The notes below the pieces were generated by a model. That model had not been told where the DNA came from and made no database searches. It saw only the letters and a list, made by a program, of their open reading frames with translations. Positions 50,363 to 60,136 of a stretch of DNA of 64,000 nt are shown here, one piece after another. Source of the DNA: Botryllus schlosseri (lineage: Eukaryota); NCBI GenBank assembly GCA_051294905.1, contig CM119376.1, forward strand, positions 16,492,001 to 16,556,000, read 5' to 3'. The number at the start of each line of letters is the position of its first letter. The first letter of the stretch is position 1. The translations under genes were made by a program, and so were the position numbers.

Positions 50363-52105
50363 CGTGGTAGCTGAATCTGGGATACTTACTATACGTTATG
50401 TACAACTGATTGGTGGTGCAAAACCGGAATATAACTTTCATAAGTTTTACGTTATGTTTATGTTGTAAAATGTGATTCAGCGAAAATCGGTGATCCGATG
50501 CATCATTATTTTAGGTGTCATTACATTATGTGGTTTAGAAATTATATTGGGTTACTGAAAAATCGCCCCGACTACTCGATATGCTTCGTTCGATGGACAT
50601 ATTTGCCGTAATCAAACAGCTGTGTGGTGGTAAAAATGCAGTTGTTTCATTGAAGCAGCAACATAATAAAGATGGATGTGTTCGTACAACAAAACAACAT
50701 GATTAAGTTCCTTTCGAAACGTGTCTGTGACAATGACCATTACTGTCATTGTCCTTCAACGAACATTGGTAAATATTCAATTTCGTCGCGTGGCATGCAG
50801 TTCGACTTCGAGGTGATGCGAACAAAGGATCTGCTAGCCTATAATAGGCCACGGAAAACTGCAATACATTTCGCCAAAATGCTCGTTGATGGACATTGTC
50901 AAATTGGACATGCACTGTTGCGCATTATCAAAAGAGGCATTTTCCATCTAAATCCTAATTTAATGTTTCAGTCCCCTTTTGTTATTGTTGATGGGTGTGC
51001 GCGCTCCTCTTTAATAAATTACTACTTTACCAGAAAAACCAGTATTTTCACTACCACGCATTTTTTTGCAAGAGTTTCGCATTAAAAATAATAATGTGGA
51101 ATAATTTGGCAACGAACCAACACAAATTATAAACCACAGAAAGTAATGACACCCGAAATTTAAATAGCATCGATCAGCTGACAGCGATTAGTTGGATTAG
51201 TAGTCTGGTACCACCATGGAAAATTCCATGCTGATACTCATTCATTCATATTTGCGCAGCTGTAAATAAAACGAAGACACGGAGATGGGACTCTATCGTC
51301 CTTATCACTTGCTCTATGCGACCACAACTACGGAAATGTTTTTCTCACTGCTCATTATTTGTCACTGTTGTAATTACGCGAAGGAATGAATCATTGATAG
51401 CGTCGGTAGGCGTGGCGTAGAGATACTGTTTTAGCAAGTATACCAATGAAAACTTGAACGAAGATGACTGACGGACTCATCGCTGGAGTATATACAATAC
51501 CCAGTATAACATTAGACCTATGTGAGGTGATTATCTGCGACTGTTACCCGTCAGTGTGTGATAATGTAGTTTTACTTAGCATTGGAATCAATGTCCTATG
51601 CTCACACAATTCCTTATCTTTTTTATATATTTTATGAAATTACTTCAACTTGGAGAATCATTGGGGTCAAGTGTAGAATACGGCCACCTCGAGAAAGTGA
51701 TCCCCATGACCATCACCGATCAGTGTTGCACCTGAAACTTCAGTGCTGCACCTGAAACTGTCGGAATTCAGAGTGCTTCACGTAGTTACCGACTATGCTC
51801 CCCACTAGACCCTATAAATCCTGTCAAGGTTCCATATTATATCTTATCATATTATTATATCTTGAATTCACAGATACACATGCCGGTGACGAGCAAGATT
51901 ACATTTTACATCGCTCGCTCGCATACCAGATGAACGGCTTGTACAAGAAATCGAAAGAAAGGGGAAAGGAAGCGACTTACTCCAATCTCTTCACCACATT
52001 ATGTATTGTGTATCGCATTTTTATCGAAAATATAAAAAATAAAACGCATGACGCCTATGCCCGCGCAGTTGCCCAGAAAAGACCCGACGTAAGAAAGTAC
52101 TCATG

Positions 52106-54530
52106 TACACTTATGTGAAGACACTCGCATAGTCGCGTATCATACCAAGTGTACTTTCCAGCCACAATAGTTATGTACAGACACTCGCATAGTCGGGTAT
52201 GATACCAAGTGTACTTTTCAGCCACAATAGTTATGTACAGACACTCGCATAGTCGCGTATCATACCAAGTGTACTTTTCAGCCACAATAGTTATGTACAG
52301 ACACTCGCATAGTCGGGTATGATACCAAGTGTACTTTTCAGCCACAATAGTTATGTACAGACACTCGCATAGTCGGGTATGATACCAAGTGTACTTTTCA
52401 GCCACAATAGTTATGTACAGACACTCGCATAGTCGCGTATCATACCAAGTGTACTTTTCAGCCACAATACTTATGTGAAGACACTCGCGTAGTCGCGTAT
52501 CATACCAAGTGTACTTTTCAGCCACAATACTTATGTGAAGACACTCGCATAGTCGCGTATCATACCAAGTGTACTTTCCAGCCACAATAGTTATGTACAG
52601 ACACTCGCATAGTCGGGTATGATACCAAGTGTACTTTTCAGCCACAATAGTTATGTACAGACACTCGCATAGTCGGGTATGATACCAAGTGTACTTTTCA
52701 GCCACAATAGTTATGTACAGACACTCGCATAGTCGCGTATCATACCAAGTGTACTTTTCAGCCACAATACTTATGTGAAGACACTCGCGTAGTCGCGTAT
52801 CATACCAAGTGTACTTTGCGGCCAAGGCTACTCATGTAGGTACTCTCCAATAATAGGGCATGATACCAAGTGTACTTTTCAGCCACAATACTTATGTGAA
52901 GACACTCGCATAGTCGCGTATCATACCAAGTGTACTTTGCGGCCAAGGCTACTCATGTAGGTACTCTCCAATAATAGGGCATGATACCAAGTGTACTTTT
53001 CAGCCACAATACTTATGTGAAGACACTCGCATAGTCGCGTATCATACCAAGTGTACTTTCCAGCCACAATAGTTATGTACAGACACTCGCATAGTCGGGT
53101 ATGATACCAAGTGTACTTTTCAGCCACAATAGTTATGTACAGACACTCGCATAGTCGCGTATCATACCAAGTGTACTTTTCAGCCACAATACTTATGTGA
53201 AGACACTCGCGTAGTCGCGTATCATACCAAGTGTACTTTTCAGCCACAATACTTATGTGAAGACACTCGCATAGTCGCGTATCATACCAAGTGTACTTTC
53301 CAGCCACAATAGTTATGTACAGACACTCGCATAGTCGGGTATGATACCAAGTGTACTTTTCAGCCACAATACTTATGTGAAGACACTCGCGTAGTCGCGT
53401 ATCATACCAAGTGTACTTTTCAGCCACAATACTTATGTGAAGACACTCGCATAGTCGCGTATCATACCAAGTGTACTTTCCAGCCACAATAGTTATGTAC
53501 AGACACTCGCATAGTCGGGTATGATACCAAGTGTACTTTTCAGCCACAATAGTTATGTACAGACACTCGCATAGTCGGGTATGATACCAAGTGTACTTTT
53601 CAGCCACAATAGTTATGTACAGACACTCGCATAGTCGCGTATCATACCAAGTGTACTTTTCAGCCACAATACTTATGTGAAGACACTCGCATAGTCGCGT
53701 ATCATACCAAGTGTACTTTCCAGCCACAATAGTTATGTACAGACACTCGCATAGTCGGGTATGATACCAAGTGTACTTTTCAGCCACAATAGTTATGTAC
53801 AGACACTCGCATAGTCGCGTATCATACCAAGTGTACTTTTCAGCCACAATACTTATGTGAAGACACTCGCGTAGTCGCGTATCATACCAAGTGTACTTTT
53901 CAGCCACAATACTTATGTGAAGACACTCGCATAGTCGCGTATCATACCAAGTGTACTTTCCAGCCACAATAGTTATGTACAGACACTCGCATAGTCGGGT
54001 ATGATACCAAGTGTACTTTTCAGCCACAATACTTATGTGAAGACACTCGCGTAGTCGCGTATCATACCAAGTGTACTTTTCAGCCACAATACTTATGTGA
54101 AGACACTCGCATAGTCGCGTATCATACCAAGTGTACTTTCCAGCCACAATAGTTATGTACAGACACTCGCATAGTCGGGTATGATACCAAGTGTACTTTT
54201 CAGCCACAATAGTTATGTACAGACACTCGCATAGTCGGGTATGATACCAAGTGTACTTTTCAGCCACAATAGTTATGTACAGACACTCGCATAGTCGCGT
54301 ATCATACCAAGTGTACTTTTCAGCCACAATACTTATGTGAAGACACTCGCATAGTCGCGTATCATACCAAGTGTAGTTTCCAGCCACAATAGTTATGTAC
54401 AGACACTCGCATAGTCGGGTATGATACCAAGTGTACTTTGCGGCCAAGATACTCATGTAGGTACTCTCGCATAATAGGGCATGATACCAAGTGTACTTTG
54501 CGGCCAAGATACTCATGTAGGTACTTTCCA
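52106..54530 (-). repeat. 60-bp tandem satellite array, left arm of the Merlin element (about 40 units)
   Basis: Unit gccacaatagttatgtacagacactcgcatagtcgggtatgataccaagtgtacttttca with a few recurrent variants. 61-bp variant units occur near 52820-52880 and 52940-53000, and type-II units near 54430-54530. Confidence 0.97.
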
Positions 54531-54648
54531 CAGCCCTGTACTCATCAAATCTTGTTTCCAGCCACAATACTCAGGTGTATCATGTTTATTTGTGAAAGAA
54601 CGAAACAAAGAAAATTGAACGAAATTGCAGGAATGGTGCATTCTCATA

Positions 54649-55815
54649 TTAAAATTGATACTCTGGATGAGTCGCAATCGCATGAATGATATCGGGGAAG
54701 TAATGTGCCCTATCTCTAGTTCTTCGCCACATCCACTCATCAATATAGGAGGGCACAAAACTTCTTACCGAACCATTCATGCGATTGAATTTTCTTTTGC
54801 AATCTCGCCATTGACTTTCAATATTATTGGTATGCACGCCGTCGGGTGCCACGTATAAATCCTTATGACACACCGATTTGTGCGTATAATTCAGGCCCAT
54901 TCCTGTTAACGAAATATAAATACTTTCATGAAAGTGATCGTTATCGTTGAAATATATATTTTTACCGTTTATGCCACGATATGCAGCCCATTGATCGGAC
55001 CAAATTTCAGTCCCTGGAGCAATGTATTGCCGAATAATCGGCAAAAGTGTACCGGCGTCGCGACGATCGACGAATCGCATGAAGCATTGACTGCATAAAA
55101 CATTTATTATTCTTTAAGTTTTGCTAACCTTGGGTGGTATTTTCTGTATACAAACTTCGTTGCAAGATCCACGCCTCCAAATATCCACTGTTGTGGGACG
55201 GGCCTTGCCTGGGCGTTTGCCCCACGGCCGCGCTTGGCTATGACAGACTCGTCAATAGCCACAACGTGTCCTAGACCACCAACGACGCCGGAGCCTCTCA
55301 GTAGCTCACTCGAGCAGACCTTGAAAATATCACAGAGTAATCATAGTGCCATGCTATACAATTAAACTTGGAAATTACCTCCCTGAAAAATTGACACCAG
55401 TCAATGCAGGTCCGATTACTGATCTTTAATTCGTGTATGATCGAGACCTGCAAATGGTCCTGTGACCAAAAGTAGAGGAGGTACAGTAGTTGCAATACCG
55501 TCAGATTGCTTTTGTAAAAGAAAGAACCAAGACGTATGCTCCAAAAATTCTTGCATTTCTGTGAATGAAAAATGTCACAAAATATTAGTTTCTGGCTCCA
55601 ACAAAAAAAAATGTATGACTTCCTACCGGACAACGCCAGGCGGTCTGATCTTTGACGTTCCTGAATTTTTCAGCGCATGGCACGCTGCATTGTGGGCAAT
55701 TCTGTTGCCTTGCAAGTAGTCCATGCTGCCTGAAAAACTGAATGGCTGCAGTGTTGCTTGACAGCGCGCCCATTCCAATGAGCTCTGGTATGCCTACACC
55801 AACTAAACTCGCCAT
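54649..55815 (-). CDS. Merlin/ISXO2-like DDE transposase, 5 exons, 303 aa, apparently intact
   Basis: Exons 55815-55627, 55558-55379, 55319-55156, 55090-54966 and 54902-54649 (912 nt); introns 68, 59, 65 and 63 bp, all GT-AG. N-terminal Zn-ribbon CPQC..WRCPKC, then VAIDES (D), WIFGG, IWSDQWAAY (D), HTNNIESQW (E) and YIDEWMWRR. Confidence 0.9.
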
Positions 55816-56275
55816 GCTTAGGCTACTGATAAATGTGGGCTATGAAATGAAATGATATATTATTTAGCGATGATTTGTTTTACAACTTTTATTACAACAT
55901 AAAATTATTCATAGATAGAAATCAGCCTAATTCTAAAGGCCACTATAGTTTCTACTGCGCCTAATTTTTAATTATATTCCTGCAAGTTTGCAAGTTTCTC
56001 TTTCCTGTTCATTCATTCGTTACTTGCATTCACATCTTCACCGCCTTTTGTTGACCAAACGCTGCTGAAGTTATTGCTCGACTTACACATGGAAGAGTCG
56101 TGTTCATCAGGCCCGGAAACTCTTCCACCGTGATCAATTATTAAGTTCATTGTTAATCACAATGTTTTTTCCGGTTTATGAGCATGTACCATTGTTGAAG
56201 ATGATACCTTCATGTGACCAATGTGGGTTGACGTACATAAGGACGCATTCTGACTGTACAATGCCTCTCGACATG

Positions 56276-56530
56276 CCTACATGTACCTACATGAGTATCT
56301 TGGCCGCAAAGTACACTTGGTATCATGCCCTATTTTGCGAGAGTACCTACATGAGTATCTTGGCCGCAAAGTACACTTGGTATCATGCCCTATTATTGGA
56401 GAGTACCTACATGATTATCTTGGCCGCAAAGTACACTTGGTATCATACCTATCATTGGAGAGTACCTACATGAGTAGCCTTGGCCGCAAAGTACACTTGG
56501 TATCATGGCCAATTATGCGAAAGTACCTAC
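56276..56530 (+). repeat. Short internal array of the related type-II 60-bp unit (about 4 units)
   Basis: Repeats of gagtacctacatgagtatcttggccgcaaagtacacttggtatcatgccctatt.., sharing aaagtacacttggtatcat with the main satellite. Confidence 0.9.
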
Positions 56531-57346
56531 ATGAGTATCGATGCCATTTCTTTTACATTGCTGGACAAGCTGGGATAAAGACCAATTTCAAGAACGTGCT
56601 CTTTGTCAAAGTCATCCAGCGATATGCTCTTTGTATGAAATATGTCAATGAATTCAACTGCATCGCACTTCACAAAGGCCCATTTGAAATTTTCCGGCAA
56701 TGGTATTGGCGTCCACATTAAACGGAGTACTGAATAGTCAGAATTCATTTTGTAGAGAAGGAATGTTGGAAAAGCGGGTGAATATTCACTTATTCAGTAG
56801 TTAAATTTCGTATCACAGTTAGAAATGTAGTGTTGGTACTAGGTTTTCTCTCCTCCAGTATAGGAAAGTGAGCATAATTTTCTTTGTAGGCTACTGTTGA
56901 CATTTCAAGAGTCACAGATTCGTTTAGAATGCGCCTAAACATCTCATCTATCCCCCTGAAGTTGCAAATTCAATTTGTTCAGATGCGACGTTAAATGTAC
57001 CAGGAAAGCAAGAAGAGATACCCATTTTCGATTACAAGATTATGAGTCGGCGATATTAGAGGAAAGTTGCTACTTCATTTCTCAGTTCATAGACTCGTGT
57101 AAGCATAGCTGCTTGACTTAATGCGTGAACATGACAGATATAGGCCTACAGGACATCGCCATATTGATTCTCTGCTTAGTAATATCTGGCGTAACTGATT
57201 CAGTTAATGAGACAAAAATCATATTAACAGTTTTCCCCATTGCAAGGAAGGACACCCTTATTGTCACACCCCATTAGAGTGGTAAACTATTTAAAAAAGT
57301 ATGGAACACCTTCGGTTGCGAGATACACTCGATTGATAAGCACTGA

Positions 57347-57440
57347 TCCAGTCGATGAATGGATGTGGCGTCGGACCAGAGAAAGAGATCATTACTTTTC
57401 GGACATTGTTCAGGAAATCGCCAGGCAACACCCAGTGTAA
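57347..57440 (+). pseudogene. C-terminal remnant of a second, diverged Merlin transposase
   Basis: DEWMWRRTRERDHYFSDIVQEIARQHPV* aligns with DEWMWRRTRDRAHYFPDIIHAIATHPEYQF* of the intact gene. The downstream cctgcaatttcgt segment also matches that gene's 3' flank. Confidence 0.85.
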
Positions 57441-57649
57441 AATGAGCCCTTTAATTTATTGAGATTTGACTGCTCAGAATTATCTAGTTATCGAAGTGTG
57501 CCTGCAATTTCGTAATTCCGTTTTTTTCTACATTTCGTTTCGTTTTTGTTTTGTTGATAAACGTGCTGCCATTGGCTATAGTTCGAGTCTATCTACATTT
57601 GACCGGACGTTGGAGTAGGAGTCAGGGTCAGGGCCATTTCTATAATATG

Positions 57650-59534
57650 CGAGTGTCTATACATAAGTATCGTGGCTGGAAAGTACACTTGGTATCATAC
57701 CCGACTATGCGAGTGTCTGTACATAACTATTGTGGCTGGAAAGTACACTTGGTATGATACGCGACTATGCGAGTGTCTGTACATAACTATTGTGGCTGAA
57801 AAGTACACTTGGTATGATACGCGACTACGCGAGTGTCTGTACATAACTATTGTGGCTGAAAAGTACACTTGGTATGATACGCGACTATGCGAGTGTCTTC
57901 ACATAAGTATTGTGGCTGAAAAGTACACTTGGTATGATACGCGACTACGCGAGTGTCTTCACATAAGTATTGTGGCTGAAAAGTACACTTGGTATCATAC
58001 CCGACTATGCGAGTGTCTGTACATAACTATTGTGGCTGAAAAGTACACTTGGTATCATACCCGACTATGCGAGTGTCTGTACATAACTATTGTGGCTGAA
58101 AAGTACACTTGGTATCATACCCGACTATGCGAGTGTCTGTACATAACTATTGTGGCTGGAAAGTACACTTGGTATGATACGCGACTATGCGAGTGTCTTC
58201 ACATAAGTATTGTGGCTGAAAAGTACACTTGGTATCATGCCCTATTATTGGAGAGTACCTACATGAGTAGCCTTGGCCGCAAAGTACACTTGGTATGATA
58301 CGCGACTATGCGAGTGTCTTCACATAAGTATTGTGGCTGAAAAGTACACTTGGTATGATACGCGACTACGCGAGTGTCTTCACATAAGTATTGTGGCTGA
58401 AAAGTACACTTGGTATGATACGCGACTATGCGAGTGTCTGTACATAACTATTGTGGCTGAAAAGTACACTTGGTATCATACCCGACTATGCGAGTGTCTG
58501 TACATAACTATTGTGGCTGAAAAGTACACTTGGTATCATACCCGACTATGCGAGTGTCTGTACATAACTATTGTGGCTGGAAAGTACACTTGGTATGATA
58601 CGCGACTATGCGAGTGTCTTCACATAAGTATTGTGGCTGAAAAGTACACTTGGTATGATACGCGACTACGCGAGTGTCTTCACATAAGTATTGTGGCTGA
58701 AAAGTACACTTGGTATGATACGCGACTATGCGAGTGTCTGTACATAACTATTGTGGCTGAAAAGTACACTTGGTATCATGCCCTATTATTGGAGAGTACC
58801 TACATGAGTAGCCTTGGCCGCAAAGTACACTTGGTATGATACGCGACTACGCGAGTGTCTTCACATAAGTATTGTGGCTGAAAAGTACACTTGGTATGAT
58901 ACGCGACTATGCGAGTGTCTGTACATAACTATTGTGGCTGAAAAGTACACTTGGTATCATACCCGACTATGCGAGTGTCTGTACATAACTATTGTGGCTG
59001 AAAAGTACACTTGGTATCATACCCGACTATGCGAGTGTCTGTACATAACTATTGTGGCTGGAAAGTACACTTGGTATGATACGCGACTATGCGAGTGTCT
59101 TCACATAAGTATTGTGGCTGAAAAGTACACTTGGTATCATGCCCTATTATTGGAGAGTACCTACATGAGTAGCCTTGGCCGCAAAGTACACTTGGTATGA
59201 TACGCGACTATGCGAGTGTCTTCACATAAGTATTGTGGCTGAAAAGTACACTTGGTATGATACGCGACTATGCGAGTGTCTGTACATAACTATTGTGGCT
59301 GAAAAGTACACTTGGTATCATACCCGACTATGCGAGTGTCTGTACATAACTATTGTGGCTGAAAAGTACACTTGGTATGATACGCGACTATGCGAGTGTC
59401 TGTACATAACTATTGTGGCTGAAAAGTACACTTGGTATCATACCCGACTATGCGAGTGTCTGTACATAACTATTGTGGCTGGAAAGTACACTTGGTATGA
59501 TACGCGACTATGCGAGTGTCTTCACATAAGTGTA
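57650..59534 (+). repeat. 60-bp tandem satellite array, right arm (about 31 units), inverted relative to the left array
   Basis: Reverse complement of the same unit. 61-bp variant units occur near 58230, 58770 and 59130. Confidence 0.97.
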
Positions 59535-60136
59535 CATGAGTACTTTCTTACGTCGGGTCTTTTCTGGGCAACTGCGCGGGCATAGGCGTCATGCGTTTTA
59601 TTTTTTATATTTTCGATAAAAATGCGATACACAATACATAATGTGGTGAAGAGATTGGAGTAAGTCGCTTCCTTTCCCCTTTCTTTCGATTTCTTGTACA
59701 AGCCGTTCATCTGGTATGCGAGCGAGCGATGTAAAATGTAATCTTGCTCGTCACCGGCATGTGTATCTGTGAATTCAAGATATAATAATATGATAAGATA
59801 TAATATGGAACCTTGACAGGATTTATAGGGTCTAGTGGGGAGCATAGTCGGTAACTACGTGAAGCACTCTGAATTCCGACAGTTTCAGGTGCAGCACTGA
59901 AGTTTCAGGTGCAACACTGATCGGTGATGGTCATGGGGATCACTTTCTCGAGGTGGCCGTATTCTACACTTGACCCAATCATTGCTGCTCACCTGTTATA
60001 TTAGGCAAAACGTACCGAGATTCCAGTAGCGCTTATCGATATAGTCTTCTAAAATTGTCTCTTTTTAGCCCAGGCTTACAAAGAAATACTTAATGCTTGA
60101 TTAGACTGAAACTATGCATATGAAACGGAACTTATC

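What the first reader, a model, noticed from the sequence alone, without database searches (positions are those of the whole stretch)
51668..54530. Satellite monomer repeats the motif at the TIR tip, possibly amplified transposase-binding sites
Seen: the TIR tip at 51668-51687 reads CAAGTGTA-gaata-CGGCCAC. Main monomers read CAAGTGTA-ctttt-CAGCCAC and type-II monomers CAAGTGTA-ctttg-CGGCCAA, with the same spacing and the same orientation on each arm. This core is invariant among monomer variants. Inference: the arrays derive from the element end and offer about 70 candidate transposase-binding sites, which could promote end synapsis across a long element or titrate the enzyme.
Basis: partly seen in the sequence, partly recalled or inferred. 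Interest (0 to 1): 0.8.

Follow-up and report, generated by a model that had tools for sequence, protein, structure and literature searches.

The report
Merlin transposon arms repeat tip motif
An intact 8.3-kb Merlin jumping gene in a marine animal carries 75 tandem 60-bp units in its inverted arms, each holding a look-alike of the 20 bases just inside the element's tip, which are probably extra docking sites for its own transposase; this is known in other transposon superfamilies but I found no description of it in Merlin.

Summary
The element is 51664-59976, starts GGG and has an 8-bp target duplication AATCATTG, so the motif is TIR positions 5-24, not the very tip. CAAGTGTA-N5-CRGCCA occurs exactly 77 times in the window: both tips, 71 arm monomers and 4 monomers of an internal mini-array. 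All copies have one orientation relative to their arm.

Tip and monomer agree at 15 of 20 positions. Unbiased tests give p about 0.005-0.03, so the match is real but modest.

Three results favour the binding-site reading. A matrix built only from TIR tips of related Merlin families finds the monomer core in the same register. Two distant Merlin families (L069, L051) carry subterminal direct repeats of their own tip positions 6-25, again without the terminal bases. The monomers lack the terminal GGGT, which suggests binding without cleavage.

Origin from the element end, and a role in synapsis or titration, remain untested. The closest TIR relatives have no such repeats.

Galileo, Foldback and Tetris are precedents, so this is a new variant of a known kind. 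The scan had noted this family elsewhere in the genome (s1-243951). I put about 0.55 on transposase binding.

The parts
51656..51663 (.). Left copy of the 8-bp target-site duplication AATCATTG
   Evidence: Identical to 59977-59984. Contigs of the same species join 51663 directly to the right flank.
51664..52110 (+). Left TIR, unique part (447 nt). It starts GGGTCAAGTGTAGAATACGGCCAC, and the tip-module motif lies at 51668-51687.
   Evidence: 100% identical to the reverse complement of 59530-59976. The inverted repeat runs 801 nt at 99%. No variant at 5% or more in 51664-51702 among copies in public contigs.
51720..51759 (+). 20-bp subterminal direct repeat, 2 copies (TCAGTGCTGCACCTGAAACT), mirrored at 59881-59920
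   Evidence: Tandem Repeats Finder.
52111..54530 (+). Left array of 40 monomers of 60/61 bp. Variant order is ABBBBCCABBCZCZCABCCACCABBCABCCACCABBCAzz. Each monomer carries CAAGTGTA-N5-CRGCCA.
54649..55815 (-). Merlin transposase gene with 5 exons (55815-55627, 55558-55379, 55319-55156, 55090-54966, 54902-54649). It encodes 303 aa with an intact DDE triad.
   Evidence: GT-AG introns and an open frame. Pfam DDE_Tnp_IS1595, E = 1.7e-14. Aligns end to end with relatives, 46% identity to a Ciona intestinalis protein.
56283..56539 (-). Internal mini-array of 4 type II monomers in right-arm orientation, about 470 nt upstream of the transposase start codon
57351..57434 (+). Relic of a second transposase C-terminus (28 aa, 68% identical to the intact gene). 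It faces the right array as the intact gene's 3' end faces the left array.
   Evidence: tblastn E = 2e-9; ORF 57240-57440.
57646..59529 (-). Right array of 31 monomers (order ABBBCZCABBCZBCCABBCCZCABBCCBBAD read from the tip), with a higher-order period of 421 bp
59530..59976 (-). Right TIR, unique part, with the tip motif at 59953-59972
59977..59984 (.). Right copy of the target-site duplication AATCATTG

Best explanation
The element is a recently inserted, probably autonomous Merlin (IS1595-like DDE) cut-and-paste transposon.

**Recognition module (inferred).** Positions about 5-24 of its terminal inverted repeat form a two-block recognition module, CAAGTGTA and CGGCCA, with centres about 12 bp apart. 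I infer that the N-terminal DNA-binding region of the transposase reads it. The first four bases, GGGT, belong to the cleavage site.

**Monomers (inferred).** Each 60-bp monomer carries a diverged copy of this module without GGGT. It would therefore bind transposase but not be cut. The arrays most likely grew by unequal exchange or slippage from one or a few subterminal direct repeats of the module. Such repeats are seen in other Merlin families.

**Consequence (inferred).** 35-40 sites sit beside each tip. They would concentrate transposase on the arms and, if the enzyme multimerises, could zip the two inverted arms together. The same sites would also soak up enzyme.

**Shown versus inferred.** Shown: element anatomy, motif counts, the similarity statistics, and repeats in the same register in other families. 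Inferred: binding, the origin of the arrays, and any effect on transposition.
For: 1. Exact motif in both tips and in all 75 monomers, one orientation per arm, and nowhere else in the window.
2. The tip/monomer match beats genomic and shuffled controls: p = 0.005-0.014 and about 0.03.
3. TIR tips of related families share GGrTCAA.T and ACGG..C blocks with this tip. A matrix built from those relatives alone picks CAAGTGTACTTTGCGGCCAA as the best site of the type II monomer. Its score equals that of the element's own tip, p = 0.005-0.012 for tip positions 4-24 or 5-24 and about 0.03 when the terminal GGR is included.
4. Families L069 and L051 have 1-2 subterminal direct repeats per arm of their own tip positions 6-25 (17-19/20 identical, none of 300 shuffles reached the observed match, p < 0.004). 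The two flanking blocks are constant and the central 2 nt vary across 9 copies.
5. The monomers lack the terminal GG that all Merlins conserve (PMC8101967).
6. The tip and the monomer core show no variants at 5% or more among copies in public contigs, while other TIR and monomer positions vary.
7. The transposase gene is intact. The model of the Ciona relative has a zinc-ribbon-like sheet plus a helical module ahead of the RNase H-like core.
8. Precedent: the Galileo THAP domain binds sites inside the tandem repeats of its long TIRs (PMC3688188).
Against: - The similarity is only 15/20 and p is 0.005-0.03, for a match noticed after the fact.
- Two mismatched positions (A15, A17) are conserved among relatives' tips. 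Agreement does not correlate significantly with conservation (my count from the tips: mean 3.1 against 2.25 of 5 relatives).
- The invariant part of the monomer extends beyond the tip-like part (ATAC, CTTT), so invariance may be concerted evolution rather than selection on a site.
- The five families with the most similar tips have no tip-like subterminal direct repeats.
- One of these families shows a 61-bp subterminal duplication in one copy (L086), and that unit lacks the tip motif.
- I found no published DNA-binding data for a eukaryotic Merlin transposase.
- Long arrays usually lower transposition efficiency.
Confidence: 0.55

Rival explanations
1. Shared descent without function. The unit once arose from a tip-proximal or subterminal segment and expanded neutrally by slippage and unequal exchange within long inverted arms. 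The motif persists only because the array is young and homogenised. Transposase binding, if any, has no consequence.
For: - Higher-order variant patterns and different monomer orders in the two arms show ongoing array turnover.
- The invariant block is wider than the tip-like part.
- The outer 801 nt of the arms are 99-100% identical, which points to a recent origin or homogenisation.
- Tandem repeats occur in many Merlin families without any proposed role (PMC8101967).
Against: - No similarity between tip region and monomer beyond the 20 nt.
- The retained positions form a site that a matrix from foreign tips recognises.
- Types I and II differ at roughly half of the positions outside the core yet keep it.
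Confidence: 0.2
2. Chance resemblance. The 60-bp repeat is an unrelated minisatellite that settled in the arms. Its 15/20 match to the tip is a coincidence noticed after the fact.
For: - p is only 0.005-0.03 per test.
- Among about 100 tip-versus-subterminal comparisons in other families, several reach p about 0.01-0.03 without obvious meaning.
- The closest TIR relatives lack such repeats.
Against: - The match lies in the register, orientation and conserved core that the binding-site model predicts.
- A matrix built without this element's tip finds the same site.
- L069 and L051 show that Merlins do repeat this register.
Confidence: 0.2
3. The core is a site for a host factor or a regulatory element, such as a promoter or enhancer, or a small-RNA or heterochromatin source, rather than for the transposase.
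For: - A mini-array lies about 470 nt upstream of the transposase start.
- Runs labelled RNA hold the TIR and array words.
- The core holds near-palindromes (GGTATGATACC, AAGTGTACTT) typical of dimeric factors.
Against: - It does not explain the match to the tip or to foreign Merlin tips.
- No strand-specific or small-RNA data were examined.
Confidence: 0.05

Closest known systems
Galileo (P superfamily, Drosophila buzzatii) long TIRs with THAP-binding sites in tandem repeats (Marzo et al. 2013, PMC3688188)
   Same: Both are autonomous cut-and-paste elements with kilobase TIRs that contain tandem repeats. A transposase-binding sequence near the end recurs inside the repeats. The proposed role is specificity and higher-order synapsis that offsets element length.
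   Different: Galileo has a different superfamily and DNA-binding domain (THAP). It has only 4 repeats of about 140 bp, of which 2 carry a site. Its primary site is about 70 bp from the end, and binding was shown by EMSA. Here there are 31-40 units of 60 bp per arm, all with the motif. The motif starts at position 5 of the tip, and nothing has been tested biochemically.
Foldback elements and Tetris (Drosophila; PMC4079207)
   Same: The inverted arms are built largely of tandem repeats. The Tetris TIR-220 unit shares a 37-bp stretch (about 80%) with the flanking TIR domain, and the repeats can seed satellites.
   Different: Tetris is non-autonomous with an unknown transposase. Here the element encodes an intact Merlin transposase, and the shared stretch is the tip-proximal 20 nt.
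IR-DR ends of Sleeping Beauty, Tc3 and Bari-type Tc1/mariner elements (as summarised in PMC3688188)
   Same: An outer site at the tip is combined with inner direct repeats of the binding site that lack the cleavage bases. L069 and L051 show this layout in Merlin.
   Different: IR-DR ends have a fixed two sites per end within about 230 bp. Here the inner site sits in a unit amplified to dozens of copies 480 nt from the tip.
Subterminal repeats of hAT elements (Herves, PMC3143072; Hermes and Ac from my own knowledge)
   Same: Short motifs related to the TIR recur subterminally and are bound by the transposase.
   Different: In hAT elements the motifs are 5-9 bp and scattered in both orientations. 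Here the module is 20 bp, strictly tandem and in one orientation.
Merlin families with internal tandem repeats (Lopes et al. 2021, PMC8101967)
   Same: Same superfamily. Tandem repeats of 12-163 bp are reported inside elements and suggested to be proto-satellites.
   Different: In the passages I retrieved that paper draws no link between repeat units and the TIR tip, and its text never uses 'binding site'. The repeats described are few in copy number.

Membership tests
Merlin superfamily (eukaryotic IS1595/IS1016-like DNA transposons) | Transposase with a DDE_Tnp_IS1595 domain | tested here: met
   Pfam PF12762, E = 1.7e-14, 54.5 bits against a cut-off of 27. There are 2763 homologues in the representative library, and the best full-length one is a Ciona protein at 46% identity.
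Merlin superfamily (eukaryotic IS1595/IS1016-like DNA transposons) | 8- or 9-bp target-site duplication | tested here: met
   AATCATTG on both sides. The empty-site form is seen in contigs.
Merlin superfamily (eukaryotic IS1595/IS1016-like DNA transposons) | TIRs beginning 5'-GG | tested here: met
   GGGTCAAG... at 51664 and its complement at 59976. This is the same start as relatives L001, L002, L005 and L083.
Merlin superfamily (eukaryotic IS1595/IS1016-like DNA transposons) | Intact DDE catalytic triad | tested here: met
   In the 303-aa model the aspartate of AIDES, the aspartate of WSDQW and the glutamate of NNIESQW align with the conserved columns of relatives.
Foldback-like long-TIR elements (FB, Galileo, Tetris) | TIRs of 0.5 kb or more made largely of internal tandem repeats | tested here: met
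   The arms are 2.87 kb and 2.33 kb, of which 2.42 kb and 1.88 kb are 60-bp arrays.
Foldback-like long-TIR elements (FB, Galileo, Tetris) | Secondary transposase-binding sites within the repeats (shown for Galileo) | not testable with these tools
   Only sequence similarity to the tip module is available. EMSA or footprinting is needed.
IR-DR type ends | An inner direct repeat of the tip binding site lacking the terminal cleavage bases | tested here: met
   The monomer core equals tip positions 5-24 at 15/20, and ATAC replaces GGGT.
IR-DR type ends | A fixed, small number of sites (two per end) at conserved distances | tested here: not met
   There are 40 and 31 sites per arm plus 4 internal ones, and the numbers differ between arms.

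The most novel reading that the evidence does not exclude
This Merlin family has turned its own transposase-recognition module into a self-carried satellite that sets its transposition rate. The arrays act as an antenna and zipper that pairs the two ends of a long element, and at high copy number as a sponge that titrates transposase. The mini-array upstream of the gene would give feedback on transcription. If so, array length would be a heritable, rapidly evolving control of element activity. It would also give the first defined DNA recognition site for a eukaryotic Merlin transposase.
Probability: 0.2. Interest if true: 0.7.

Novelty: new variant of a known kind. Interest (0 to 1): 0.45.

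Why it matters
- I found no published DNA-binding data for a eukaryotic Merlin transposase. This element points to a concrete 20-bp, two-block candidate site (TIR positions 5-24). The candidate is supported by tips of related families and by subterminal repeats in two other Merlin families, and simple binding assays can test it.
- It extends the pattern of long inverted arms full of binding-site repeats from the P and Foldback-like elements to a superfamily related to bacterial IS1595.
- It is a clean case of a transposon carrying kilobase arrays that could seed satellite DNA.
- The element looks intact, so it could serve for transposition assays with arrays of different lengths.

Tried and rejected
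1. **Close relatives for a true tip-to-monomer covariation test.** The representative search and the word-based search gave nothing above about 55% identity. Sequencing-run look-ups found the TIR only in the same species; the matches in other organisms disappeared when the flank was left out.
2. **Ciona relative P0002.** It has no gene position on record.
3. **First metagenome scan.** A 5-sequence alignment worked.
4. **Arrays carrying their own tip motif in other Merlins.** The elements with recognisable ends among the about 85 loci fetched are mostly compact (1.2-2 kb) and without arrays. The L083 family has 20-22-bp subterminal repeats, and one copy has a 61-bp duplication; neither resembles its tip.
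5. **Claim that tip/monomer mismatches fall only on positions that vary among families.** I dropped it. Positions 13 and 14 vary, but 15 and 17 are conserved. Mean conservation is 3.1 for matched positions and 2.25 for mismatched ones, which is not significant.
6. **Exact-pattern probability (about 1e-7).** Rejected as post hoc, because the pattern was defined from the match. The shuffle-based p values are the honest figures.
7. **The 548-aa ORF across the left array.** It is an artefact of a stop-free 60-bp period.
8. **Fold search of the relative's model.** It returned only retroviral integrase cores and said nothing about DNA recognition.
9. **A second tip-like site in type I monomers.** CAATAGTTATGTACAGACAC lies 19 nt downstream and is 12 of 19 identical to site 1. 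This is suggestive of an older 19-20-nt period but too weak to claim.
Full report
**Anatomy.**

The region is one Merlin DNA transposon at 51664-59976 (8313 bp).
- It starts GGGTCAAGTGTAGAATACGGCCAC and ends with the complement.
- It is flanked by an 8-bp duplication, AATCATTG.
- The outer 801 nt of the arms are 99% complementary, and the 447-nt non-repetitive part is identical in both arms.

Contigs of public runs of the same marine animal (coded organism A) read from 51661-51663 directly into CTGCTCACC..., which is the sequence after the right duplication. The flank is therefore itself a repeat family with empty paralogues, and this confirms the limits of the element.

Inside the element:
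- Left array of 40 monomers, 52111-54530.
- A five-exon transposase gene on the minus strand, 55815-54649. It has GT-AG introns, encodes 303 aa and has an intact DDE triad. It matches Pfam DDE_Tnp_IS1595 and is 46% identical to a Ciona intestinalis protein.
- A mini-array of 4 type II monomers, 56283-56539.
- A 28-aa relic of a second transposase C-terminus, 57351-57434.
- Right array of 31 monomers, 57646-59529.

**The observation.**

Because the tip is at 51664, the motif occupies TIR positions 5-24.

- CAAGTGTA-N5-CRGCCA has 77 exact matches: two tips and 75 monomers. Each points the same way relative to its arm.
- Elsewhere in the 64-kb window there are only two sites, each with two mismatches, against 0.55 expected.
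- Of the monomers, 64 are type I (CAAGTGTA-CTTT[T/C]-CAGCCAC, once GTTTC) and 11 are type II (CAAGTGTA-CTTTG-CGGCCAA).
- The invariant block is wider than reported, ATACCAAGTGTAC-TTT. The rest of the unit differs at roughly half of its positions between the two types.
- The arrays have higher-order patterns (a 421-bp period; variant strings such as ABBCC). The two arms share only about the first six units (the 801-nt inverted repeat), so the arrays turn over by unequal exchange.

**Is the match more than chance?**

Tip and monomer agree at 15 of 20 positions.
- I compared the best ungapped match of the 40-nt tip against a circular monomer on both strands with 4000 genomic 40-mers and 4000 shuffled tips. 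This gave p = 0.014 for type I and 0.005 for type II.
- Against the real subterminal 570 nt, same strand only, p is about 0.03.
- The tiny probability of an exact pattern match is not valid, because the pattern was defined from the match.

The resemblance is significant but modest, and it was noticed after the fact.

**Comparative evidence.**

No close relative exists in the protein collections. The best are 46-55% identical. The TIR is found only in organism A.

I fetched about 85 loci of more distant Merlins. I defined ends by inverted repeats starting GG and by target duplications.

*Shared tip blocks.* Several families have tips like this one:
- L083: GGATCAATTGCATTAGACGGACCC
- L005: GGATCAACTATACTATACGATCAC
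- L001: GGATCAACTGACATATATGCAC
- L002: GGGTCACTTTTGCTTTACGGGTCC
- L052: GGACCATTCGAAAAGAACGGACC

They share GGrTCAA.T and ACGG..C.

*Matrix test.* A weight matrix built from these relatives alone, without this element's tip, picks CAAGTGTACTTTGCGGCCAA as the best site in the type II monomer.
- The score is about that of the element's own tip (9.5-10.95 against 10.0-10.9 bits).
- p is 0.005-0.012 for tip positions 4-24 or 5-24. When positions 1-3 are included it is about 0.03, because the monomer lacks GGR.
- Type I scores lower at this site (p about 0.02-0.05). It has a second tip-like site 19 nt downstream.

*Repeats in the same register elsewhere.* Two related families from JGI metagenomes, L069 (9-bp duplication CTATAAACG) and L051, carry direct subterminal repeats of their own tip positions 6-25.
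- They have one or two repeats per arm, 40-91 nt from the end.
- The repeats are 17-19/20 identical to the tip module and lack the terminal GGTGA.
- Across nine copies the outer blocks CGGTGCyGT and TGTCGACAC are nearly constant (one copy reads CAGTGC, and the right tip of L069 ends GTCGACCG) and the two central bases vary.

This is the register and the two-block pattern seen here. A Merlin tip module that recurs inside the arm without its cleavage bases is therefore not peculiar to this element.

*Against generality.*
- The five families with the most similar tips have no such direct repeats.
- One copy of the L083 family (L086) has a 61-bp subterminal duplication without the tip motif.
- My attempt to show that tip/monomer mismatches fall only on family-variable positions failed. 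Positions 15 and 17 are conserved yet mismatched.

**Variation among copies.**

I laid contigs of four runs of organism A on 51560-52330.
- No alternative letter reached 5% in 51664-51702, or in the core of the second monomer (52206-52225).
- Other TIR positions (51703, 51746, 51771, 51808, 51925 and others) and monomer positions (52170, 52177, 52194, 52230) do vary.
- Summed contig depth over the array is roughly tenfold that of the unique TIR. The tool warns that this depth is not a copy number.

This fits either constraint or recent spread. Contigs drop rare variants, so the evidence is weak.

One diverged contig reads CTAGTGTA in its first monomer, but its tip was not visible.

I could not test that.

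**Mechanism.**

Most likely (about 0.55), positions 5-24 are the sequence-specific binding module of the transposase, and GGGT belongs to the cleavage site. The monomers would then be non-cleavable copies of the module.

The model of the Ciona relative has mean pLDDT 87.8. It shows short helices, a three-stranded zinc-ribbon-like sheet (residues 48-77, with conserved cysteines C42, C45 and C67) and a four-helix module (83-139) ahead of the RNase H-like core. Two sub-modules could read two blocks about 12 bp apart. This is inference only.

The arrays probably grew from one or a few subterminal repeats of the kind seen in L069 and L051.

Whether they help or limit transposition cannot be decided from sequence. 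They could help through an antenna effect or by bridging the inverted arms, as proposed for Galileo. They could limit it through titration or the cost of length.

The rivals are:
- Neutral expansion of a unit that merely descends from such a site (0.2).
- Coincidence (0.2).
- A host-factor or regulatory site (0.05).

**Comparison with known systems.**

The element passes every Merlin membership test: domain, 8-bp duplication, GG ends and DDE triad.

Functionally the closest precedent is Galileo. [quoted passage not shown] Foldback and Tetris elements have arms made of repeats, and the Tetris unit shares 37 bp with the adjacent TIR domain (PMC4079207). IR-DR ends of Tc1/mariner elements hold inner binding sites.

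Tandem repeats inside Merlins have been reported (PMC8101967). The passages I retrieved from that paper draw no link to the tip, and its text never uses 'binding site'. My literature searches found no DNA-binding study of a eukaryotic Merlin transposase.

This is therefore a new variant of a known kind, not a new principle.

**Verdict.**

| Item | Assessment |
|---|---|
| Observation | Confirmed, with the tip moved to 51664 |
| Interpretation | Partly supported |
| Interest | 0.45 |

The value lies in a concrete, testable recognition site for a superfamily with no published DNA-binding data that I could find, and in an apparently intact element suited to test what binding-site arrays do.

Noticed in passing
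window 57351-57434 (+), with 57440-57645: A 28-aa relic of a second Merlin transposase C-terminus, 68% identical to the intact gene. The stretch after it looks by eye like a diverged copy of the intact gene's 3' UTR. It faces the right array just as the intact gene's 3' end faces the left array. The right arm may be an old inverted copy of a left-arm-type structure whose outer 801 nt were later homogenised.
   Followed up: partly
window 51720-51759 and 59881-59920: A 20-bp unit (TCAGTGCTGCACCTGAAACT) is present twice in tandem at TIR positions 57-96 of both arms. It is unrelated to the tip motif and may be a second kind of subterminal site.
   Followed up: no
window 51612-51663 and 59985-60015: The insertion site lies in another repeat family. 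Contig depth rises 20-50-fold in the last 50 nt before the element, and many contigs carry the uninterrupted target with small differences.
   Followed up: partly
L069:358-1867 and L051:68-1459 (JGI metagenome contigs Ga0058701_10072389, Ga0058702_10052671): Two related Merlin families have 1-2 subterminal direct repeats per arm of tip positions 6-25. The flanking blocks are conserved and the central dinucleotide varies, an IR-DR-like layout I did not find described for Merlin.
   Followed up: yes
L005:7158-7400, L006:7049-7200, L052:426-560, L073:1192-1230: Several unrelated Merlin families carry repeated TGACGTCA (CRE-like) palindromes just inside their TIR tips. This window's element has none.
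   Followed up: no
window 52921-54567 (-): A 548-aa ORF runs through the left array. It is a by-product of a stop-free repeat whose period (60) is a multiple of three, not a gene.
   Followed up: yes
window 52146-54530, type I monomers: Each type I unit has a second, weaker tip-like site (CAATAGTTATGTACAGACAC) 19 nt after the first, 12 of 19 identical to it. This hints at an older period of about 19-20 nt inside the 60-bp unit.
   Followed up: partly
window 51664-52330 (runs X20, X23, X24, X28): Runs labelled RNA of the same species hold about half of the sampled words of the TIR and first monomers, so the arms may be transcribed.
   Followed up: no
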